From: Octopus sinensis
Taxonomy: Eukaryota
Assembly (NCBI RefSeq): GCF_006345805.1
Contig: NC_042997.1
Span: forward strand, 173,786,001 to 173,850,000
Reading direction: 5' to 3'
Length of the DNA stretch: 64,000 bases
In this document: piece after piece, positions 11,388-64,000 of the stretch
Position numbering within the stretch: the first letter of the stretch is position 1
How the letters are laid out: every line of letters begins with the position of its first letter
Position numbers and translations under genes: made by a program
The notes under the pieces: generated by a model
Told to the model about the DNA's origin: nothing
Seen by the model: the letters and a program-made list of their open reading frames with translations, nothing else
Databases searched by the model: none

Positions 11388-11487
11388 NNNNNNNNNNNNN
11401 NNNNNNNNNNNNNNNNNNNNNNNNNNNNNNNNNNNNNNNNNNNNNNNNNNNNNNNNNNNNNNNNNNNNNNNNNNNNNNNNNNNNNNN
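11388..11487. other. Assembly gap (100 N)
   Basis: Exactly 100 N. Confidence 0.98.
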
Positions 11488-15057: not shown

Positions 15058-15466
15058 ACTCTTTACTCTTTTTACTTGTTTCAGTCATTTGACTGCGGCC
15101 ATGCTGGAGCATCGCCTTTAGTCGAGCAAATCGACCCCGGGACTTATTCTTTGTAAGCCCAGTACTTATTCTATCGGTCTCTTTTGCCGAACCGCTAAGT
15201 TACGGGGACGTAAACACACCAGCATCGGTTGTCAAGCAATGCTAGGGGAACAAACACAGACAACACAAACATATTCACACACTTATAATATATACATATA
15301 TACGACAGGCTTCTTTCAGTTTCCGTCTACCAAATCCACTCACAAGGCATTGGTCGGCCCGGGGCTATAGCAGAAGACACGTGCCCAAGATGCCACGCAG
15401 TGGGACTGAACCCGGAACCATGTGGTTGGTTAGCAAGCTACTTACCAAACAGCCACTCCTGCGCCT
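15058..15466 (-). mobile_element. Full-length SINE family A
   Basis: Reverse complement of the 41182-41604 copy, including tRNA-like head, internal (CA/TA) tract and (GAGTAAA)n tail. Confidence 0.9.
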
Positions 15467-15674
15467 GTTATGTATTACATTCCTTTAGCTCCTCCATTTT
15501 TCTACATCTATCCTTTTCGCACAGTGTTTGAGGCCGGTGGTTATTTAAAACAAAACATTGTTTAATGCATTTTGAGAATAACATTATCTTGGGGATAATT
15601 CGTGTGTAATAATTATCTCCCTTAGAAATGCATTTTCTAAATATAAATGAGGAAATCAAGACAAGTTAATAAGC

Positions 15675-17396: not shown

Positions 17397-17721
17397 AGCT
17401 GGCAGACTTTGGCTGAAGAGAAATCGGGAAACTATTTGGCGCTAAATTTCGAAACCGGTACCAAGTTAACCAGCATTTACTTGTTCTGAGCCATTTGAGG
17501 TAAGACATTATTTTTGTTCATTGATATTTTTCCTATCATGTCTGTAATAGATTTGTGACTATTCGGTGGTACAGAAGCATTTTTTGACTTCTATTGCTTA
17601 GCGATGTAGGTACTTATGTGGTGTCCTTTTCAGATGAATGTGGTACTTAAGTTGAGGCACCAGAATTTAGTACCGTATTTTCCATACAATTTCAAAATAA
17701 GGTGATTAGCATCAAAATAAG

Positions 17722-18008
17722 CAACAAGGATATCAAGAGGTAATATAGTACGATCGTTTCATGCAACTCCATTTCATTGAACAATGCAACCATTACATGA
17801 ATTTAAAAGCAGAGCTATCCTCAGCTGCACAAAGACATAGAATTAAATTAAATTAAAATTAAATTAGATTTAATTAATTTAATTAAATTCTAAGTCTTTG
17901 TGCAGCTGAGGATTGCTCTGCATTCAAATTAATGTAATGATTGCATTGTTCAATTAAATGGAGTTGCGTGAAACGATCGTATTGTATTACCTCTGGATAT
18001 CCTCGTTG
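17722..18008. repeat. Fold-back element, ~125-bp diverged arms, each with a degenerate hammerhead-like motif
   Basis: Arms 17722-17845 and 17886-18008 pair with scattered mismatches; plus arm has CTGAGGA (17906)...GAAACGATCGTA (17970-17981). Confidence 0.75.
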
Positions 18009-18010
18009 TA

Positions 18011-18074
<64 letters not shown>

Positions 18075-29779: not shown

Positions 29780-30124
<345 letters not shown>

Positions 30125-30127
<3 letters not shown>

Positions 30128-31466
30128 GAGGGTGAAAAATCGATATTAATTTAATAATACCATTAATTTAACACCGAGTGGCTTAGCACAAAAGACTACG
30201 GAGAAAATACAAATTTATACATAAATTATAAGAGAGTTAACCACTATGTGGATAACTCTAGTGCTAAAAATAGCTCCGAAGCAACCACAGAAGATCCGTT
30301 TCCAACTAGAATCAACACACATTTAACGGAAGGAAAGTGAATACAACGAATAAAATAGATTGACCCTGTACAATTGTTTCATTACTAATGTAATATGTAG
30401 TTTTACTTACACATACATCTATAAATCTTCGGCAGAGTTTGTCTCAAATGCAATTAATTAGATCGATTCGAGCGTCGAAAACACGAGCGGTCCAACGAAT
30501 TACATTTTTAGTTATGTCTCAAATTCCGCGCCAAAAGCATGTCAAGACTCCATTGGAAACGTATGCCGCATCAAATAAAATATTTACTGCCGCATAGTTA
30601 AATTTATAAATTTATAAATGAGGGTGAAAAATCGACATTAATTTAATAATACCATTAATTTAACACCGAGTGGCTTAGCACAAAAGACTACGGAGAAAAT
30701 ACAAATTTATACATAAATTATAAGAGAGTTAACCACTATGTGGATAACTCTAGTGCTAAAAATAGCTCCGAAGCAACCACAGAAGATCCGTTTCCAACTA
30801 GAATCAACACACATTTAACGGAAGGAAAGTGAAATACAACGAATAAAATAGATTGACCCTGTACAATTGTTTCATTACTAATGTAATATGTAGTTTTACT
30901 TACACATACATCTATAAATCTTCGGCAGAGTTTGTCTCAAATGCAATTAATTAGATCGATTCGAGCGTCAAAAACACGAGCGGTCCAACGAATTACATTT
31001 TTAGTTATGTCTCAAATTCCGCGCCAAAAGCATGTCAAGACTCCATTGGAAACGTATGCCGCATCAAATAAAATATTTACTGCCGCATAGTTAAATTTAT
31101 AAATTTATAAATGAGGGTGAAAAGTCGATATTAATTTAATAATACCATTAATTTAACACCGAGTGGCTTAGCACAAAAGACTACGGAGAAAATACAAATT
31201 TATACATAAATTATAAGAGAGTTAACCACTATGTGGATAACTCTAGTGCTAAAAATAGCTCCGAAGCAACCACAGAAGATCCGTTTCCAACTAGAATCTA
31301 ATGAAACAATTGTACAGGGTCAATCTATTTTATCGTTGTATTTCACTTTCCTTCCGTTAAATGTGTATTGATTCTAGTTGGAAACGGATCTTCTGTGGTT
31401 GCTTCGGAGCTATTTTAGCACTAGAGTTATCCACATAGTGGTTAACTCTCTTATAATTTATGTATA
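30125..31466 (-). mobile_element. Tandem 493-bp repeat (~2.4 units) plus terminal inverted segment; PLE pseudo-LTR/retrozyme-like
   Basis: GAGGGTGAAAA at 30128, 30621 and 31113; 31299-31466 is an inverted partial unit; (TA)n on both sides. Confidence 0.8.
30363..30438 (-). ncRNA. Variant type I hammerhead-like motif (second copy 30856-30931)
   Basis: Minus strand: ACTCTG-CCGAAGA-[45 nt]-GAAA-C-AATT-G-TA/CAGGGT; 6-bp stem I, palindromic CAATTG stem III, GUA site; C at position 4 and U.U at the base of stem II. Confidence 0.55.
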
Positions 31467-31483
31467 TATATATATATATATAT

Positions 31484-35540: not shown

Positions 35541-36210
35541 AAACCCTCTTGGTAAACAATATTCTTAATTTTTTTTGTTGTGGAACAAATGCGAATAGAT
35601 TTTTTTTGCTTCCCACTCTAGAGCATCCAACATACAAGTGCCCGTGTGAGAAGCACGACTCTTCCAAGTGGAGTCCTACCACAGCGTCTGACCCTGGGAT
35701 TTATTGATAGACATTGTCAAGTTGATACGAATAAGAAATTGCAGTCTTCTGAATTAAAAAGGAGTTTCTGTTCCGATGGAATTGGAGGAATCCTAGGTAT
35801 GAAAACATCCTCTTCTTTTTCACATCCAGAAAGAATGGTAGTCTCAATAACATGAGACCACCATCATCTTCTTTACCACCAGGCTAATCCCATTGCAGAG
35901 GTTTGGTGAATCCAAATTTCTCAATAACATTACTGGAGTTCCTACTTTAAGTTCCAATCTGTGGGAAGCTAGTCCTGGAGGCTCCAATGAATTGAGAAAT
36001 TCTTTTGGATAACTTATTACCACTTCTGGATCTCGGATTGTATCAATTGACTTATAGATATGAGAACTTCCAGAAAGATACTGCAGTAACTGCTCGTTAA
36101 TTTTACTTACAGTGCTGTCTTTTGGGGGAGCCAGTATTGGTCTTTCACACAGCCAATTGACATTGTGACAATTTTTCGACCAATGGAGGATCTCCTTTTG
36201 GAAACATTAT
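35541..36210 (-). mobile_element. Helitron helicase C-terminal remnant
   Basis: WLCERPILAP, YKSIDTI, YPKEFLNSLEPPGL, LKVGTPVMLLRNL, VFIPRIP, TMSINKSQGQT, CFSHGHLYVGCSRV, KNIVYQE. Confidence 0.9.
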
Positions 36211-41140: not shown

Positions 41141-41181
41141 AAAATATATATAAGGAATATATAAAAGAATATATATATATA

Positions 41182-41604
41182 GGCGCAGGAGTGGCTGTTT
41201 GGTAAGTAGCTTGCTAACCAACCACATGGTTCCGGGTTCAGTCCCACTGCGTGGCATCTTGGGCAAGTGTCTTCTGCTATAGCCCCGGGCCGACCAATGC
41301 CTTGTGAGTGGATTTGGTAGACGGAAAATGAAAGAAGCCTGTCGTATATATGTATATATATATAAGTGTGTGTGAATATGTTTGTGTGTCTGTGTTTGTC
41401 CCCCTAGCATTGCTTGACAACCGAAGCTGGTGTGTTTACGTCCCCGTAACTTAGCGGTTCGGCAAAAGAGACCGATAGAATAAGTACTGGGCTTACAAAG
41501 AATAAGTCCCGGGGTCGATTTGCTCGACTAAAGGCGGTGCTCCAGCATGGCCGCAGTCAAATGACTGAAACAAGTAAAAAGAGTAAAAAAAGAGTAAAAA
41601 GAGT
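41182..41604 (+). mobile_element. Full-length SINE family A
   Basis: GGCGCAGGAGTGGCTGTTTGGTAAG (A box)...GGGTTCAGTCCC (B box)...GCAGTCAAATGACTGAAACAAGTAAAAAGAGT tail. Confidence 0.9.
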
Positions 41605-44267: not shown

Positions 44268-45207
44268 ATGATGAAGAAACAACAAAAGCTATAAAACAAA
44301 TGAATCAAACTAAAAATAGAACAGCAACGAACCATGATAAAACGATGGCAAGAAAAGCCCCTTCATGGTAAATACTGGACTAAACAAAACGCAAAAGAAA
44401 TAGACAAAGAAAAATCCCAGCAATGGTTGAGAAGCTCAAGACTCAAAGCAGAGACAGAGGGATTTTTAATTGCAGCACAAGACCAAAGCCTCCCCACCAG
44501 AAATTACCAAAAACATGTAATGAAAAGAAATATAACAAGTAACTGCAGAATATGTGGAGATGGACAAGAAACAATAAATCATATTATCTCTAGCTGCCCA
44601 GTCCTGGCTAAGAAGGAATATATTCACAGACATGACAGAGTTGGAACCTACATACGTTGGAAGCTATGCCAACATTATAGAATAACAACAGAAAAAAGAT
44701 GGTATAGGCACACACCAGAAAACGTCACAGAAAACGAAAAAGCAACCATACTCTGGGATATGCCGATACACACAGATAGAGAAATTAAGGCCAACAGACC
44801 AGATATAGTTGTCAGAGATCATGAAGAAAAAAAGTGCTTTCTAATTGATGTATCAATACCGGCAGATGACAACGTGTCTCTAAAAGAAATGGAGAAACTC
44901 TCAAAATACAAAGACCTAGAAATAGAGGTAACCAGAATGTGGAATCTAAAAACAGAAACAATTCCTATCATAGTAGGTGCATTAGGCATGATAAAAAAAT
45001 ATTCAGACAAATACATAACAAAAACACCAGGACTTACAAACACATATAACATACAGAAAATTGCACTACTAGGCACTGCACACATCCTACGCAGAACAAT
45101 TTCCATACAATAACCATCAGAGCATCACAACAAATCACAGCACATACCCAAGGCACATAGAGCTGCGCTCGGTAGTGAAGTGAAAGCACGCTATAAAAAT
45201 AAAACTA

Positions 45208-45480: not shown

Positions 45481-45990
45481 TGAAGCTATACATTAGCGTC
45501 GTATTTATTACGTTCGCTATTTTCCAGTAAATATCGATACTTCGTTGTATTATTTATGTACTTTTATGTATAATTTACCTTCACGGGCTATTCTTTACTG
45601 GAAAGCAATACTCTAGTATTGCATTACTATTTTCATTGAAACTTCTTCACTGTTCTCGCTCTGTTAACGCTTTGGCGTTCAGACAAGTGTACTGCATAGA
45701 TGGCAACATTTGAAATGTTGTTGAGGTATATGTGGCTGATGAAGATAAATCAATTATACGATTGGCATTCGTATTTTGAAAAATCCGAAACCGGTACTGC
45801 ATTATCCTTATCTAGGTTTTTCATTTTTCAGATGTTCTTCCTAGAGGTAAGACAATTTTTCATGTTTGTTGCACACACGCATCTTTACTAGTACATACGC
45901 AGTGAAGCTATACATTAGCGTCGTATTTATTACGTTCGCTATTTTCCAGTAAATATCGATACTTCATTGTATCATTTATTTACTTTTATA
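45481..45990 (+). mobile_element. ~422-bp-period direct repeat (1.2 units) enclosing a hammerhead motif; retrozyme/PLE-like
   Basis: TGAAGCTATACATTAGCGTCG at 45481 and 45903. Confidence 0.7.
45730..45802 (+). ncRNA. Type I hammerhead motif, very short stem III
   Basis: ATGTGG-CTGATGA-AGAT..ATCC-GAAA-C-CG-G-TA/CTGCAT; stem I 6 bp with two GU pairs; palindrome ACCGGT. Confidence 0.65.
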
Positions 45991-46122
45991 TAAATTATAT
46001 TATATATATATAACGTATAATATATATACATATATGCATATATATATGAATTATATATATAAACATATGTATACACCAATATTTACATATACACATACAT
46101 GCACACGCACGCACGCGCACGC

Positions 46123-47010: not shown

Positions 47011-48115
47011 ATGGCAAAAAATAAAAACACTGTCTTGGAGTGGGAAGTTGTGTCCCCCAAGCAGTGGGTAAAGGACCATAATGAGAGAATGGTGGTGTTG
47101 AGGACATATTCTAAGTCCCTCGACACCATCACTGTGTTCTCTCAAGTAGATATTGAGAAGAAGTTGGCAGAACACCTGCCAACCATCAAGTTTATTGCAA
47201 GGGGTGTCAAATATGCAACATTGTGGTTGCTATTTGATACCCCTGAGGAGGCTCGCATTTTTGCGTGCCAGCCCCTGGAAGAGGAGAAAATCCTGTTTCT
47301 ACCCACATATCGTGGGAGGAAATTGACAAAATCTTGGGTGTGTGGGCTGCCACTCAAAATAGAACTCGAGTGGATAGAGGACACTATCCGCCGGGGTCTG
47401 GGTGGCAGCGAAGCCAAGCTCTTGAATATTAAAATGATACCAGCGGCTGATTGGGTGGGATCAAACGCAGTTTTGACCCTGTGGACTCAATCAGCCGATA
47501 ATCTGGTGTTCCCAGATTTTTTGAGGATGACCGGGTCCAAGTATCCTGTGATTCTTAAGGGACGCCTCCTCCAAGTGTCATCAGTGCCTGGAGCCTGGCC
47601 ACATTAAGAAGAACTGTCCCAAGGACCAGAACAGGGTCCTAGAGCAGTTAGTTGTGGAAGAACCCCCTTCCCCTCCTCCTCCGAAAAGAGAGATGGAGGA
47701 GGAGAGAGTGACCTCTCCCGAAAAAAGGGGGAGAAAAAGAAAGAAGGGGAGCAACAATGGTTGCTCTCTGAGGGATCCCGGGATTGCGGGAGGAAGCGAG
47801 GTTCCTGCGGTTATGGCAATGGAGCCATCCACTCCCTCACCAAAGATAAAAAGGAAAAGAGAAAAAGAACCGGACAGTGCTGGAGGTATGCAGTGTACTG
47901 CTGGAATGTCCCTAGCCCTCTTCGGTGGGAATCGTGTCACCGACAGAGGAAGCTGTAACTTCGTTGGTTGTGCCACCGGCAGAGGAAGAGACACCGTTGG
48001 CGGGAATTGCGCTGCCAGCGGTAGAATTGAATACCTCGACCCCGGAGGAAAACAAATTATTGCTCTTCTTCTACAGAGGTGGAGAGGTAGAAAAGGTGGT
48101 GGAAAATCACTATAA
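47011..48115 (+). pseudogene. Tx1/L1-like ORF1 with CCHC zinc knuckle, one frameshift near 47567; ORF2 absent
   Basis: MAKNKNTVLEW...PVILKGR, then +1 frame KCHQCLEPGHIKKNCP (47576-47617, CX2CX4HX4C) in frame with the 47654-48115 ORF; 5' leader about 46439-47010. Confidence 0.7.
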
Positions 48116-53381: not shown

Positions 53382-55103
53382 GAGAGAGCAACCATACACT
53401 GGGATATGCCGATACACAGAAACAAAGAAATTAAGGCCAATACGCTGGATATAGTCGTCAGAGGTCACCAAGAAAAAAATGCTTTCTAACTGATGTATCA
53501 ATACCAACAGATGACAATTTTTCTCTAAAAGATAGGGAGAAATTTTTCAAAATACAAAGATCTGGAAATAGCGATTACTCGAATATGGAGTATAAAATTC
53601 CTATCATAGTGGACGCATTAGGTATGATGAAAAAATATCCAAATAACAAAAACACCAGAACTAACAAGTATAAACAAGGGTTGGACAAAATAATGGAAAC
53701 ACCTAGTATCAAAGCATCATAATTTTGAAGTATCTATAAAACAGTCAAAAGCTTGTTTATTTTTATCTTTTTTATTTATTATTACTGTTGCTTAATATGT
53801 TTTTCTAAAATTGCTGTTTATTTTCAGATATCATCAGAAAATATAGAATTAACATTCATTAAAGGGACAGATCTATCGGAGTTTCAAAGAGGTCAAATTG
53901 TTGGTACTCGTATGGCAGGCGCTAGCGTAACGAAAACAGCCGAAATATTTGGTGTATCAAGAAGTACTGTCTCGAAAATAATGACAGCCTTTGAGAAAGA
54001 GGGAAAACCTCGTCGAAACAAAAACTCCAGAAAACAACAACTTTCAGATAGGAACCGTCGGACTCTTACGCGAATTGTTAGAAAGGGTCACAAAACTGCA
54101 ACTCACAAAATTACTGCAGAACTTAATGACCCCCTCGAGAACCCAGTTTCCACAAAAACTGTTCGCCGGGAGCAGCACAAAGCTGGATTTCACGGGAGGG
54201 CTACAATCAGAAAACCACTACTTTCAAAAACAAACGTTGCAAATGCGTTTAGAATGGAGTAAAAACCTGCAGAATTGGTCCCTAGAGCAGTGGAAGAATG
54301 TTATTTTCTCGGACGAGTCCTCCTTTACCTTATTTCCGACCACCGGCCGAGTATACGCGTGGAGACAGCCAAAAGAAGCTTTTGACCAAGACTGCATTCT
54401 TCCAACTGTTAAACAGGGTGGAGGATTTGTAATGATCTGGGGAGCTATATCTTGGAAATCCGCTTGCCCAATGATTTCCCTTCATGGCAGAATCAATAGT
54501 CAAGACTATCTAAGCATTTTATCTGATTAATTTCATCCTATGTTGCGAACTGTTTCCGGAGGGAAACGCAATCTTTCAGGATGATAATGCAGATGATAAT
54601 GCACCAATTCACGCAGCTAAAGTTGTTACTGAATGGCACAAGGAACATTCTAGTGAAGTTGAACATCTTATCTGGCCACCATAGTCCCCAGATCTCAATA
54701 ATATTAAACATTTATGGAGGATTTTAGAAAAAAAAATAAGGAGTAAATATTGTCCACCATCATCACTACAAGAACTGGAGACTGTTTTAGCTGAAGAATG
54801 GAAAAATTCCTTTGGAAACAATTCCAACTTTGTACGAGTCTATACCTCGTAGAATTCAAGCTACAAAGACGGTCCTACTCCATATTAAAATTAATTTGTT
54901 TGAAATTTTAAGGTGTTTCCATTATTTTGTCTAACCTCTGTATAACACAGAGAATAGCACCACTAGGCACCGCAAACTTCCTACGTGAAACACTTTCAAT
55001 AGAGTAAAAATAAGAGCATCACAACAATCGCAGCACAAGCCCAAAGCTCACAGAGCTGCGCTCGTTAGTGCAGTGAAAGCACGTGATAAAAGTAAGACTT
55101 CTG
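53382..55103 (+). mobile_element. R4/Dong-like 3' fragment split by a Tc1 insertion (53382-53674 and 54941-55103)
   Basis: Both halves are collinear with 44740-45210 and join at a TA; (AAT)n tail 55104-55193. Confidence 0.85.
53675..54940 (+). mobile_element. Full-length but inactivated Tc1 transposon
   Basis: 30-bp TIRs CAAGGGTTGGACAAAATAATGGAAACACCT and AGGTGTTTCCATTATTTTGTCTAACCTCTG; DLSEFQRGQIVG, FSDES, QDDNA, WPP*SPDLNNIKH (stop, catalytic E to K), frameshifts. Confidence 0.95.
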
Positions 55104-55119
55104 AATAATAATAATAATG

Positions 55120-55193
<74 letters not shown>

Positions 55194-55195
<2 letters not shown>

Positions 55196-55921
55196 GACGA
55201 ATGTACACAAGCTCTGCATGAAGAGGGGTAAATGTGGACGTGAGCTGATTAGCATATCGGTGTACCTCAACCGTGAAAGAAGAAACGTGGCAGCATATTT
55301 GGTAAACAGCAAACAAAACCTGCTACAGTATGCCGCTAATACAGAAGGATTTATTAAAAATGGACATGAGAGTGCTCATGAATTCCGATCACGAACAGCC
55401 AACGAGAGAGAAAGAACCTTACTCCGCATGGATTTACATGGTCAGTTCCACCGTGAGACTAGCAATTTAAAAGACCAGGAAGCATCATGGAGGTGGATCA
55501 GCAAGGGTGACATAAAAAAGAATACTAAAAGTCCAATCATCACTGCTCAAGATCAGGCATTGAATACCAACTCAGTGAAAAAGGATATATACCACACAAG
55601 TGCATCGGACCTCTGCAGAATCTGTGGGAAGAGGGTCGAAAACGGGACTCACATTGTTAGTGCTTGTGAAAGTCTTGTGCAGAAAGAGTACAAGCGCAGA
55701 CATGATAAGGTAGCCCAAAACCTTTATTGGCTACTATGCCAGAAGTATGGATACGCGGTTATGGGTGCTCGGTGCAACATACACCGGAAAAGGTAATGGA
55801 CGAAAAGGGAAAGGCGAAAGTCCTCTGGGACTTTGACTTCCAGACAGTCAAAACGTTAGAATACCGAAGGCGGATATAATAACATTTAGGAGGACAAACA
55901 AGAGTACCTAATAATTGATGT
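55194..55921 (+). mobile_element. Second R4/Dong-like subfamily fragment starting at the (AAT)n tail of the previous element
   Basis: LHGQFHRE, AQDQALNT, CRICGKRVENGTHIVSAC, YKRRHDKVA, KVLWDFDFQT; 3'-truncated. Confidence 0.85.
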
Positions 55922-56108
55922 GACAGATAGGCGTCCACTACACTCACGATCTTCAAAGATCAGGTCTCCGCTGCAAAATCGTTTAAATTACTGGTCATTT
56001 CCTCTGCAAACGTTTCGTTGATATCGTGCGCAGTATGAGCTCGTTTAAATCCTTTTTTGAAGCTGAATTGCAAAATTGCTCGAATATGGCGTTTTGACAG
56101 TTCCATTT
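55922..56108 (-). mobile_element. Mariner transposase N-terminal fragment
   Basis: MELSKRHIRAILQFSFKKG..AHTAHDINETF and EDRECSGR. Confidence 0.75.
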
Positions 56109-56177
56109 CAGATGATTGTAACAACGGGGGAAAAAATATCAATGTTAATTTATTGGTCAAGTCTATGTCTGTATTAT

Positions 56178-56450
56178 AACCTTGTGAGTGGGTTTGGTAG
56201 ACGGAAACTGAAAGAAGCCCTGGGTATATATATGTGTGTGTATTTGTGTGTGTGTGTGTTTGTCCTCCCCCCCCAACATCGCTTGACAAACGATGTTGGT
56301 GTGTTTACGTCCCCGTAACATAGCGGTTCTGCAAAAGAGGCCGATAGAATAAGTACTAGGCTTACAAAGAAGTCCTGGGGTCGATTTGTTCGACTAAAGG
56401 CGGTGCTCCAGCATAGCTGCAGTCAAATGACTGAAACAAATAAAAGAATA
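56178..56450 (+). mobile_element. SINE family A, 5'-truncated
   Basis: Collinear with 41305-41590. Confidence 0.85.
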
Positions 56451-61932: not shown

Positions 61933-62262
61933 TACGGAGATGTACTTGCATAGCAAGTGATTTGATCTGAGATCGTGTGCTGAAACGAAAACAATTGCAG
62001 CGTGGAAGGTGTTTGTAAGCCATTTAAGAAACACACAAAGCCGTTCGATTCACTTCAACATTTAAGTTTAATTTGTCAAAATATTTTCGTCGCTATAAGA
62101 CCGCGACCTGTTCATCGAGATGCAGCACGGATTTTTGTCAGTGAACAGGTCGCGGTCTTAAAGCGACGAAAATATTTTGACAAATTGAACTTAAATGTTG
62201 AAGTGAACTGAACGGCTTTTGTGTGTTTCTTAAATGGCTTACAAACACCTTCCACGTTGCAA
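61932..62262. mobile_element. (TA)n-flanked fold-back element, ~120-bp arms (61995-62114 / 62142-62262)
   Basis: Arms are near-perfect reverse complements; 27-nt loop. Confidence 0.85.
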
Positions 62263-62746
62263 TATATATATATATATATATACTCTCTCTCTCTTTTACT
62301 TGTTTCAGTCATTTGACTGCGGCCATACTGGAGCACCGCCTTATATATATATATATATATATAAAGCCTGGGTAAATAAATACTATTTTTATTACTGAAT
62401 TTGGCGAAACTGCAGTATAAGAAAAGTTAAGTTTGTAAAAGTTTTTAAATCTCATCTCACGAAATATTATCCAGCTATTGTGTATCTAGTACACTCTTCG
62501 CCTTGAATGTAATGATATATGTATAATATATGGCGTGTACTGGTACACCGGCGATTATAATTAATTTTATTGTATCGCATTTATCTTTGTTTACATATTC
62601 TCTCGATAAATTTCTGACCGTTAGACGATATACCACAATCCCCTATTTGTGTCGGGTTTGTTCGGAGTCTGCGCAGTGTTTTGAATAGTTTAGAAAGAGC
62701 ATTTCGATAGAAGCACATGGATCTATTGGTATGGTCTTTTCCATCA

Positions 62747-62835
62747 TTAACAGGAATCTTACTGATGAGCCAGCCTGGGTAAATAAATACTATTTTTATA
62801 CTGAATTTGGCGAAACTGCAGTATAAGAAAGTTAA
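62747..62835 (+). ncRNA. Type I hammerhead ribozyme, copy 1 (predicted cleavage after 62823)
   Basis: TTAAC-AGGAA-TCTTA-CTGATGA-GCCA..TGGC-GAAA-C-TGCA-G-TA/TAAGA-AA-GTTAA: full core, G-C at 10.1/11.1, bipartite stem I. Confidence 0.9.
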
Positions 62836-63143
62836 GTTTGTAAAAGTTTTTAATCTCATCTCACGAAATTATCCAGCTATTGTTATCTAGTACACTCTTC
62901 GCCTTGAATGTAATGATATATGTATAATATATGCGTGTACTGGTACACCGGCGATTATATTAATTTTATTGTATCGCATTTATCTTTGTTTACATATTCT
63001 CTCGATAAATTTCTGACCGTTAGACGATATACCACAATCCCCTATTTTGTCGGGTTTGTTCGGAGTCTGCGCAGTGTTTTGAATAGTTTAGAAAGAGCAT
63101 TTCGATAGAAGCACATGGATCTATTGGTATGGTCTTTCCATCA

Positions 63144-63234
63144 TTAACAGGAATCTTACTGATGAGCCAGCCTGGGTAAATAAATACTATTTTTATTACT
63201 GAATTTGGCGAAACTGCAGTATAAGAAAAGTTAA
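63144..63234 (+). ncRNA. Type I hammerhead ribozyme, copy 2 (predicted cleavage after 63221)
   Basis: Same motif; CTGATGA at 63159, GAAA at 63210. Confidence 0.9.
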
Positions 63235-63548
63235 GTTTGTAAAGTTTTTAAATCTCATCTCACGAAAATTATCCAGCTATTGTGTATCTAGTACACTCTT
63301 CGCCTTGAATGTAAGTAATGATATATGTATAATATATGGCGTGTACTGGTACACCGGCGATTATAATTAATTTTATTGTATCGCATTTATCTTTGTTTAC
63401 ATATTCTCTCGATAATTTCTGACCGTTAGACGATATACCACAATCCCCTATTTTGTCGGGTTTGTTCGGAGTCTGCGCAGTGTTTTGAATAGTTTAGAAA
63501 GAGCATTCGATAGAAGCACATGGATCTATTGGTATGGTCTTTCCATCA

Positions 63549-63639
63549 TTAACAGGAATCTTACTGATGAGCCAGCCTGGGTAAATAAATACTATTTTTA
63601 TTACTGGAATTGGCGAAACTGCAGTATAAGAAAAGTTAA
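63549..63639 (+). ncRNA. Type I hammerhead ribozyme, copy 3 (predicted cleavage after 63626)
   Basis: Same motif; CTGATGA at 63564, GAAA at 63615. Confidence 0.9.
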
Positions 63640-64000
63640 GTTTGTAAAAGTTTTTAAATCTCATCTCACGAAATTTATCCAGCTATTGTGTATCTAGTAC
63701 ACTCTTCGCCTTGAATGTAATGATATATGTATATATATGGCGTGTACTGGTACACCCGGCGATTATAATTATTTTTTGTATCGCATTTATCTTTGTTTAC
63801 ATATTCTCTCGATAAATTTCTGACCGTTAGACGATATACCACAATCCCTATTTTGTCGGGTTTGTTCGGAGTCTGCGCAGTGTTTTGAATAGTTTAGAAA
63901 GAGCATTTCGATAGAAGCACATGGATCTATTGGTATGGTCTTTCCATCATTAACAGGAATCTTACTGATGAGCCAGCCTGGGTAAATAAATACTATTTTT

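What the first reader, a model, noticed from the sequence alone, without database searches (positions are those of the whole stretch)
62365..64000. Retrozyme-like tandem array: a complete type I hammerhead ribozyme in each ~400-bp unit
Seen: at least four near-identical non-coding units. Each complete junction has the invariant HHR core (CUGAUGA...GAAA...GUA), stem II GCCA/TGGC closing an AT-rich loop of about 35 nt, and a two-part stem I (TCTTA/TAAGA plus TTAAC/GTTAA around an internal loop). Stem III is minimal with the palindrome CTGCAG. The array starts inside stem II directly after a (TA)n tract. Known: minimal type I HHRs with a palindromic stem III occur in Penelope-like elements, metazoan retrozymes and newt satellite-2, where adjacent copies cleave as dimers and release monomers that can circularise. 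Inference: read-through transcription gives ~398-406-nt monomers (62418-62823, 62824-63221, 63222-63626) or circRNAs, mobilised in trans by a PLE reverse transcriptase. I cannot tell whether this family has been described.
Basis: partly seen in the sequence, partly recalled or inferred. Interest (0 to 1): 0.95.

Follow-up and report, generated by a model that had tools for sequence, protein, structure and literature searches.

The report
Hammerhead-ribozyme tandem repeat (animal retrozyme)
The end of this window holds at least four head-to-tail copies of a ~400-bp non-coding repeat, each carrying a complete self-cutting hammerhead ribozyme; this is a well-described kind of animal mobile repeat ("retrozyme"), so it is a genuine but ordinary new example.

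Summary
From 62365 to the window end there are 4.1 copies of a ~404-bp unit (96% alike; the differences are almost all 1-nt homopolymer indels). Every complete junction encodes a type I hammerhead on the + strand. It has the full catalytic core, helix I of 5+5 bp around an internal loop, and helix II GCCA/UGGC carrying a ~36-nt AU-rich arm. Helix III is minimal, inside the palindrome ACUGCAGU. My descriptor finds these three motifs plus one unrelated one at 17413, and none in 200-300 dinucleotide shuffles. Rfam's models do not detect them, even at E<=10.

In silico, a double hammerhead joined through the palindrome is much more stable than two single ones (-36.1 vs -19.2 kcal/mol). It is still not the ground state.

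The array meets the published working criteria for animal non-LTR retrozymes (newt satellite 2, axolotl, mussel, coral). Transcription, cleavage, circularisation and mobilisation by a Penelope-like element remain inference. I found no related copy in any collection I could search, so conservation and covariation are untested. The host species is not identified.

Verdict: new member of a known kind, modest interest.

The parts
62342..62364 (.). (TA)n microsatellite, followed by one extra A at 62364, directly upstream of the array. Probable insertion target or junction.
   Evidence: Read directly. There are 75 perfect (TA)>=8 tracts in the window, so a random breakpoint falls within 2 nt of a tract edge with P about 0.012.
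62365..62417 (+). First, 5'-truncated unit. It holds only the 3' part of a hammerhead, from inside the helix II arm to the predicted cleavage site after 62417.
   Evidence: 100% identical over 53 nt to the end of unit 62824-63221; alignment.
62418..62823 (+). Unit 1 (406 nt), from cleavage site to cleavage site.
   Evidence: 97.5% to unit 2.
62824..63221 (+). Unit 2 (398 nt).
63222..63626 (+). Unit 3 (405 nt). Carries a 4-nt GTAA duplication.
63627..64000 (+). Unit 4, cut by the window end inside the helix II arm of the next hammerhead. The array probably continues beyond the window.
62747..62835 (+). Hammerhead 1. Outer helix I UUAAC/GUUAA, internal loop, inner helix I UCUUA/UAAGA, core CUGAUGA 62762-62768, helix II with arm 62769-62811, GAAA 62812-62815, palindrome ACUGCAGU 62815-62822. 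Predicted cut after A 62823.
63144..63234 (+). Hammerhead 2. Core 63159-63165, helix II with arm 63166-63209, GAAA 63210-63213, palindrome 63213-63220. Predicted cut after 63221.
63549..63639 (+). Hammerhead 3. Core 63564-63570, helix II with arm 63571-63614, GAAA 63615-63618, palindrome 63618-63625. Predicted cut after 63626.
63950..64000 (+). 5' half of hammerhead 4 (helix I 5' strands, CUGAUGA, start of helix II arm), truncated by the window end.

Best explanation
This is a head-to-tail array of a ~404-bp non-coding unit of the animal 'non-LTR retrozyme' class, also called hammerhead satellite DNA. It has at least 4.1 copies and runs off the window. Each unit junction encodes a complete type I hammerhead ribozyme on the + strand.

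Shown by the sequence:
- All invariant core positions are present (C3 U4 G5 A6 U7 G8 A9, G12 A13 A14, A15.1:U16.1, A17, G10.1:C11.1).
- Helix I is 5 bp, then a 5x2-3 nt internal loop, then 5 bp.
- Helix II is 4-5 bp, prolonged by a ~36-nt AU-rich imperfect hairpin.
- Helix III is only A:U plus C:G closing the palindromic tetraloop UGCA, so ACUGCAGU is an 8-nt palindrome.

Inferred mechanism, by analogy with newt, axolotl and PLE hammerheads:
1. The + strand is transcribed as a multimer.
2. Two neighbouring hammerheads pair through the palindrome into a double hammerhead with an 8-bp helix III.
3. Each copy cuts after GUA (after 62417, 62823, 63221, 63626). [quoted passage not shown]
4. A host tRNA ligase of the RtcB type circularises them.
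5. Circles or multimers are copied by the reverse transcriptase of an autonomous element, most likely a Penelope-like element. The tandem cDNA is inserted at a (TA)n microsatellite.

The mid-unit 5' boundary fits either rolling-circle copying of a circle or 5' truncation.
For: - Array and units.
- Hammerhead anatomy in exact register with the repeat.
- Non-randomness: 0 hits in 200 and in 300 dinucleotide shuffles, against 4 real hits.
- Dimer preference: the single hammerhead fold is -9.6 kcal/mol against a domain MFE of -16.2. The two-strand double hammerhead is -36.1, against -19.2 for two singles and -32.4 for two monomer MFEs. The cofold MFE (-39.7) itself contains the 8-bp inter-copy helix III. 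In a 495-nt two-junction transcript the double form is 14.4 kcal/mol better than two singles.
- No ORF. GC is 34%.
- Published criteria are met: a tandem repeat with complete hammerheads in at least two consecutive units and MFE below -5 kcal/mol (observed -12.7 to -14.7).
- Published class description: 150-450-bp repeats, type I hammerhead, GC below 50%, species-specific sequences. Short helix III with a palindromic loop implies dimeric action.
- (TA)n is a published PLE target preference, and the array starts exactly at a (TA)n edge (P about 0.012).
- Context: a second, unrelated minimal hammerhead of PLE type at 17413-17460. Also a 493-bp tandem-plus-inverted insertion flanked by (TA)n at 30113-31469. 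Both suggest PLE-type activity in this genome.
Against: - Rfam 15 hammerhead models give no hit, even at E<=10 on 1.7 kb.
- The catalytic fold is not the thermodynamic ground state. In the two-junction transcript the double hammerhead lies 9.6 kcal/mol above the MFE, and the inter-copy helix III has probability about 0.002. A competing UACUG/CAGUA helix sequesters C3-G5.
- The monomer circle is no more stable than shuffled sequence (z -0.56, +0.55, -0.05). The 'highly self-paired' trait described for retrozymes is therefore not evident.
- There is no other copy of the unit in the window.
- No relative was found in viral, metagenome or prokaryote-genome collections, or among predicted proteins. 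Dispersal, conservation and covariation are untested.
- No PLE RT or GIY-YIG ORF was detected among the window's larger ORFs.
- The 3' end of the array is outside the window, so no target-site duplication can be assessed.
Confidence: 0.8

Rival explanations
1. This is inert satellite DNA that carries a fossil hammerhead. The repeat was amplified at this locus by unequal crossing-over or replication slippage. It is not, or no longer, transcribed, cleaved, circularised or retrotransposed.
For: Only one array is seen, with no dispersed copy in 64 kb. The catalytic fold is a minor conformer in silico. The circle is not unusually structured. Rfam models are silent.
Against: All 13 invariant core positions and all three helices are intact in every complete copy. 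The copies are nearly identical, implying recent amplification or homogenisation. The start at a (TA)n edge in mid-unit looks like an insertion junction. In every animal tested experimentally, repeats of this type were abundantly expressed and processed.
Confidence: 0.12
2. The array is part of an autonomous Penelope-like element, namely tandem pseudo-LTR material, rather than a separate non-autonomous element.
For: PLEs carry type I hammerheads in their pLTRs, insert as partial tandems, and prefer (TA)n. Xenopus retrozyme consensus sequences are related to PLE pLTR sequences.
Against: At least four consecutive 400-bp units occur with no ORF between them. No RT or GIY-YIG ORF was found in the window. 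PLE minimal hammerheads typically lack loop 3 and have a long continuous helix II, unlike this one. The region downstream of 64000 is unseen.
Confidence: 0.05
3. The motif is a chance resemblance, or the tandem is an assembly artefact of a noisy long-read assembly.
For: Differences between copies are almost only 1-nt homopolymer indels, typical of long-read error. The window ends inside the array. There is no Rfam hit.
Against: 0 of 500 shuffled windows gives a single descriptor hit. The motif sits in exact register with the repeat. Error-type differences between copies argue that the copies were read separately rather than duplicated in silico.
Confidence: 0.03

Closest known systems
Invertebrate non-LTR retrozymes, e.g. 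the Mytilus galloprovincialis 350-390-bp repeats (Cervera & de la Pena 2020, PMC7229834)
   Same: Non-coding tandem unit of ~400 bp with low GC and one type I hammerhead per unit. The hammerhead lacks the archetypal loop 1/loop 2 nucleotides. In the predicted circle the hammerhead is not free to fold (reported for some mussel circles). Minimal hammerheads of PLE type occur in the same genome.
   Different: There is no sequence similarity that I could test. Invertebrate hammerheads are described as having a longer helix III and cleaving as monomers, whereas this one has the amphibian-type minimal helix III. Expression and circles are shown for mussel and not tested here.
Newt satellite 2 and axolotl Rtz331/Rtz353 retrozymes (PMC7229834; Forster et al. 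1988, as cited there and in PMC4209133)
   Same: 330-350-bp tandem units. [quoted passage not shown] Efficient cleavage occurs only as a double hammerhead formed by adjacent copies.
   Different: Amphibian hammerheads have a compact 4-bp helix II with a short loop 2 and conserved loop-loop contacts. Here loop 2 is replaced by a ~36-nt AU-rich arm. The host here is an SSR-rich invertebrate-like genome of unidentified species.
Minimal hammerheads in the pseudo-LTRs of Penelope-like elements (Cervera & de la Pena 2014, PMC4209133)
   Same: Type I topology, palindromic helix III region, presumed dimeric action, tandem arrangement, and association with (TA)n targets (PMC8557442).
   Different: [quoted passage not shown] They lie about 3 kb apart, flanking an RT-EN ORF. 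The motif at 17413-17460 in this window fits that description better than the array does.
Plant LTR retrozymes and hammerhead viroids / viroid-like satellite RNAs
   Same: A hammerhead-bounded unit that is excised from multimers and circularised by a tRNA ligase. Non-autonomous.
   Different: Those carry type III hammerheads. Plant retrozymes also have LTRs, PBS, PPT and 4-bp TSDs, and are mobilised by Gypsy elements. Viroids replicate RNA to RNA and have no DNA copy.

Membership tests
Hammerhead ribozyme, type I | Invariant catalytic core: C3 U4 G5 A6 N7 G8 A9, G12 A13 A14, A15.1:U16.1, H17 | tested here: met
   CUGAUGA ... GAAA ... U-A(17) is present in all three complete junctions.
Hammerhead ribozyme, type I | Three helices around the core. 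Helix I is the open one (5' and 3' ends), and helices II and III are closed. | tested here: met
   Helix I is UCUUA/UAAGA plus UUAAC/GUUAA, closed only by the ~310-nt rest of the unit. Helix II is GCCA(G)/(U)UGGC with G10.1:C11.1. Helix III is A:U and C:G plus UGCA. 0 of 500 shuffles match.
Hammerhead ribozyme, type I | Match to curated covariance models (Rfam Hammerhead_1 and related) | tested here: not met
   No hit at gathering score or at E<=10 on 62300-64000. My untested explanation is the ~36-nt insertion in loop 2 together with the near-absent helix III. The independent minimal motif at 17413 is not among the 150 rows printed (180 lower-scoring rows were not shown).
Hammerhead ribozyme, type I | Covariation or conservation of helices across diverged copies | not testable with these tools
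   Only near-identical copies are available. No relatives were found in any collection.
Hammerhead ribozyme, type I | Site-specific self-cleavage | not testable with these tools
   Needs in vitro transcription of monomer and dimer constructs.
Animal non-LTR retrozyme | Short tandem DNA repeat (150-450 bp) with a complete type I hammerhead in at least two consecutive units, and hammerhead MFE below -5 kcal/mol (Li et al. 2026 criteria) | tested here: met
   Period 401, 4.1 copies. Three consecutive complete hammerheads. MFE -12.7 to -14.7 kcal/mol. Criteria read.
Animal non-LTR retrozyme | Non-coding, GC below 50%, no LTR/PBS/PPT | tested here: met
   Longest ORF is 92 aa and the longest stop-to-stop frame is 85 aa. 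GC is 0.34-0.35. The unit is a simple head-to-tail repeat.
Animal non-LTR retrozyme | Predicted circRNA is stable and highly self-paired | tested here: not met
   Circular MFE is -74.7 to -82.9 kcal/mol with z = -0.56, +0.55 and -0.05 against 200 dinucleotide shuffles. About 60% of bases are paired. This is a descriptive trait of the class, not a strict criterion.
Animal non-LTR retrozyme | Expressed as unit-length linear and circular RNAs | not testable with these tools
   No transcriptome of the unidentified host could be searched by DNA.
Animal non-LTR retrozyme | Dispersed multi-locus copies, TSDs (mobility) | not testable with these tools
   One array only in 64 kb. Its 3' end lies beyond the window. 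The host genome is not available.
Animal non-LTR retrozyme | Coexistence with hammerhead-bearing Penelope-like elements in the same genome | tested here: inconclusive
   A PLE-type minimal hammerhead lies at 17413-17460, with a degenerate relative at 45736-45796. A tandem-plus-inverted insertion in (TA)n lies at 30113-31469. No PLE RT/EN ORF was found in the window.
PLE minimal hammerhead (min-HHR) | No loop 3, long continuous helix II (6-8 bp), short helix I, located in the pLTRs flanking an RT-EN ORF | tested here: not met
   The array hammerhead has a UGCA tetraloop in monomer form, a 4-5-bp helix II followed by an internal loop, and 400-bp spacing with no ORF. Family description read.

The most novel reading that the evidence does not exclude
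The hammerhead of this family may be a distinct structural subtype. It would be an obligate-dimer type I ribozyme in which the usual short loop 2 is replaced by a ~36-nt AU-rich arm, with the internal loops of helix I and helix II at the canonical distances taking over the tertiary contact. Current covariance models miss it entirely. It would belong to an animal lineage for which no retrozyme family has been reported in the papers I could search. From my memory of a SINE the host is possibly a cephalopod, but this is unverified. If so, it could be an abundant unannotated source of ~400-nt circRNAs there.
Probability: 0.25. Interest if true: 0.45.

Novelty: new member of a known kind. Interest (0 to 1): 0.3.

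Why it matters
Hammerhead-bearing tandem repeats are the source of very abundant small circular RNAs in corals, mussels and salamanders, and are thought to be parasites of Penelope-like retroelements. A further family adds to the catalogue. It also gives a natural test case in which an amphibian-style minimal helix III is combined with a long helix II arm, which standard Rfam-based annotation misses. The practical lesson is that descriptor searches, not only covariance models, are needed to annotate these elements. It does not open a new question.

Tried and rejected
- Rfam at gathering and permissive thresholds. There was no hammerhead hit for the array. The whole-window permissive scan returned only microsatellite and hairpin look-alikes of miRNA families.
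- Search for relatives with the exact hammerhead pattern in viral and metagenome contigs: 0 hits.
- A relaxed pattern in metagenome and prokaryote-genome contigs gave 32 hits. All lack a full hammerhead fold: helix I is 0-1 bp in all but two (3 and 4 bp, each with a 1-bp helix II), and helix II is 1-2 bp except in three related hits (4 bp, no helix I). They lie in human-gut, microbial-mat, marine and other metagenome contigs and prokaryotic MAGs, so I treat them as chance matches.
- Using the unit's longest pseudo-ORF to fish for spurious gene calls on other copies: nothing.
- Host identification:
  - The closest protein relatives of a LINE fragment are unnamed (NCBI GCA_024449705.1 at 80%, Logan SRR7158634 at 90%).
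  - Those accession numbers are not in the paper library.
  - A SINE-derived peptide search and a SINE sequence text search were empty.
  - The host therefore remains unidentified. 'Octopod-like SINE' is my recollection only.
- ARAGORN and the bacterial promoter/terminator scan gave nothing useful.
- Core-like strings ending in GAAACGATCGTA at 17906 (+) and 56705 (-) were rejected. They fail the stem requirements of both descriptors, and 17906 lies inside a 142-nt-arm inverted repeat.

Full report
**What is there.** Tandem Repeats Finder reports one long-period array at the end of the window: 62365-64000, period 401, 4.1 copies, 96% matches. Cutting the sequence at the motif GCAGTA|TAAGA gives five pieces:
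- a 53-nt 5'-truncated piece, 62365-62417
- three complete units of 406, 398 and 405 nt: 62418-62823, 62824-63221 and 63222-63626
- a 374-nt unit cut by the window end

The majority consensus is 404 nt. BLASTN of a unit against the window finds no other copy.

The 32 variable alignment columns are almost all 1-nt length differences in homopolymer runs, plus one 4-nt GTAA duplication. That pattern looks like long-read sequencing noise rather than divergence, so the real copies are probably nearly identical.

The longest start-to-stop ORF in the array is 92 aa, and the longest stop-to-stop frame of the consensus is 85 aa. GC is 34-35%.

**The hammerhead.** Each complete junction reads, on the + strand: UUAAC-AGGAA-UCUUA-CUGAUGA-GCCA-(35-36 nt)-UGGC-GAAA-C-UGCA-G-UA|UAAGA-AA(A)-GUUAA. 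This contains every invariant hammerhead position:
- C3-A9 as CUGAUGA, and G12 A13 A14
- the A15.1:U16.1 pair, and A17 before the cut
- the usual G10.1:C11.1 pair

Helix I is open, so the topology is type I. It has 5 bp, an asymmetric internal loop, then 5 more bp. Helix II has 4 Watson-Crick pairs plus a G:U pair. It continues after an internal loop into an AU-rich imperfect hairpin.

Helix III is only A:U and C:G around UGCA, so ACUGCAGU is an 8-nt palindrome.

**More than chance?** I wrote a descriptor requiring helix I >=5 bp, CUGANGA, helix II >=4 bp, GAAA, helix III >=2 bp and UH. On both strands of the window it finds the three array motifs and one unrelated motif at 17413-17460. It finds nothing in 200 dinucleotide-preserving shuffles. 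A second descriptor that demands a palindromic helix III gives the same four hits and 0 in 300 shuffles. The motif is also in exact register with the repeat.

Against this, Rfam 15 gives no hammerhead hit at gathering thresholds, nor at E<=10 on the 1.7-kb region. The whole-window permissive scan returned only microsatellite and hairpin look-alikes among the rows shown.

**Monomer or dimer?** For the 91-nt domain, the single hammerhead fold costs -9.6 kcal/mol against an MFE of -16.2. In the MFE, UACUG (which includes C3-G5) pairs with CAGUA.

Two domains folded together as a double hammerhead have inter-copy helices I and an 8-bp helix III. That fold gives -36.1 kcal/mol, against -19.2 for two single hammerheads and -32.4 for two monomer MFEs. 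The cofold MFE (-39.7) already contains the 8-bp inter-copy helix.

In a continuous 495-nt transcript spanning two junctions:
- unconstrained MFE: -104.2
- double hammerhead enforced: -94.6
- two single hammerheads enforced: -80.2
- equilibrium probability of the inter-copy helix III: about 0.002

So the dimer is clearly favoured over the monomer, as in newt, axolotl and PLE hammerheads. The catalytic fold is still a minority conformer in a nearest-neighbour model, which ignores tertiary contacts and co-transcriptional folding.

**Circle.** Unit-length circles fold to -74.7 to -82.9 kcal/mol with about 60% of bases paired. Their z-scores are -0.56, +0.55 and -0.05 against 200 shuffles. The 'highly self-paired' trait reported for retrozyme circles is therefore not evident here.

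**Boundaries and context.** The array starts at 62365 inside the helix II arm, directly after (TA)n 62342-62363. The window holds 75 perfect (TA)>=8 tracts, so a random breakpoint lies within 2 nt of a tract edge with P about 0.012.

Penelope-like elements are reported to prefer microsatellites, notably (TA)n, and to insert as partial tandems with inverted copies. The mid-unit start fits 5' truncation or rolling-circle copying of a circle. The 3' junction is outside the window, so TSDs cannot be assessed.

The window is repeat-rich animal DNA with 35% GC and about 9% simple repeats. It contains LINE, Tc1/mariner, Mos1 and Helitron protein fragments and tRNA-derived SINE copies. No PLE RT/EN ORF was found.

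**Relatives.** None was found:
- Exact and relaxed hammerhead patterns in viral, metagenome and prokaryote-genome contigs gave either nothing or matches that lack a full hammerhead fold, in metagenome contigs and prokaryotic MAGs.
- A search with the unit's pseudo-ORF was empty.

Conservation, covariation and dispersal are therefore untested.

The host could not be identified:
- The closest LINE-fragment relatives are unnamed.
- Accession and sequence text searches failed.
- A SINE-peptide search was empty.
- The SINE reminds me of octopod sequences, but that is memory, not a result.

**Comparison with what is known.** Short tandem repeats (150-450 bp) with a type I hammerhead, low GC, no ORF and species-specific sequence define animal non-LTR retrozymes. 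[quoted passage not shown]

A 2026 preprint gives working criteria: a TRF repeat, hammerheads in at least two consecutive units, and MFE below -5 kcal/mol. It also shows that Xenopus retrozymes are related to PLE pLTRs. The present array meets those criteria.

Its helix III is of the amphibian type, a short stem with a palindromic tetraloop. Its unit size and its lack of canonical loop contacts resemble the mussel family. The long helix II arm is the one unusual trait.

No paper in the searchable library describes this sequence or a cephalopod retrozyme. The library cannot be searched by similarity, so 'undescribed' is not proven.

**Verdict.** The RNA life cycle is inferred by analogy. This is a new member of a known kind.

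Noticed in passing
window 17408-17465 (+); related 45736-45796 (+): A second, unrelated minimal type I hammerhead. It has helix I UUUGG/CCAAG, core CUGAAGA, helix II GAAAU/AUUUC, then GAAA and the palindrome ACCGGU, with the cut after 17460. A diverged copy with a degenerate helix II lies at 45736. In both, GAG|GTAAGACA (splice-donor-like) follows about 45-55 nt downstream, which recalls intron-bearing PLE pseudo-LTRs. A 97-nt direct repeat 422 nt apart (45481-45577 and 45903-45999) brackets the second copy.
   Followed up: partly
window 30113-31469: A 493-bp non-coding unit in 2.4 tandem copies (98% alike). It begins right after (TA)n 29795-30124, is followed by an inverted partial copy (31299-31469, the reverse complement of 30213-30384), and then another (TA)n. 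This is the tandem-plus-inverted architecture described for PLE insertions. No hammerhead was found in it.
   Followed up: partly
window 62036-62262 and 17715-18015: Long, nearly perfect hairpin-forming inverted repeats (MITE-like), each flanked by (TA)n. The second has 142-nt arms that are 89% complementary, and it scores as plant miRNA look-alikes in the permissive Rfam scan.
   Followed up: no
window 41150-41330 (+), 15321-15500 (-); fragments near 56196 and 61875: Copies of a tRNA-derived SINE (GGCGCAGGAGTGGCTG...GGTTCAGTCCCACTGCGTGG...TTGGTAGACGGAAACTG), each followed by a microsatellite. From memory it resembles octopod SINEs. Host identity is not established.
   Followed up: partly
window 35847-36206 (-), 44304-45110 (+), 47552-48112 (+), 53729-54527 (+), 55077-55793 (+), 55963-56304 (-): Transposon protein fragments: Pif1 2B domain (Helitron-like), two zf-RVT LINE tails, a zf-CCHC gag-like ORF, Tc1 HTH plus a downstream ORF that reads as a Tc1 DDE by eye (no Pfam hit), and Mos1 HTH. 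No host gene was recognised.
   Followed up: partly
window 62365-64000 and 11388-11487: Differences between repeat copies are almost only 1-nt homopolymer indels, which suggests an unpolished long-read assembly. A 100-N scaffold gap lies at 11388-11487.
   Followed up: partly
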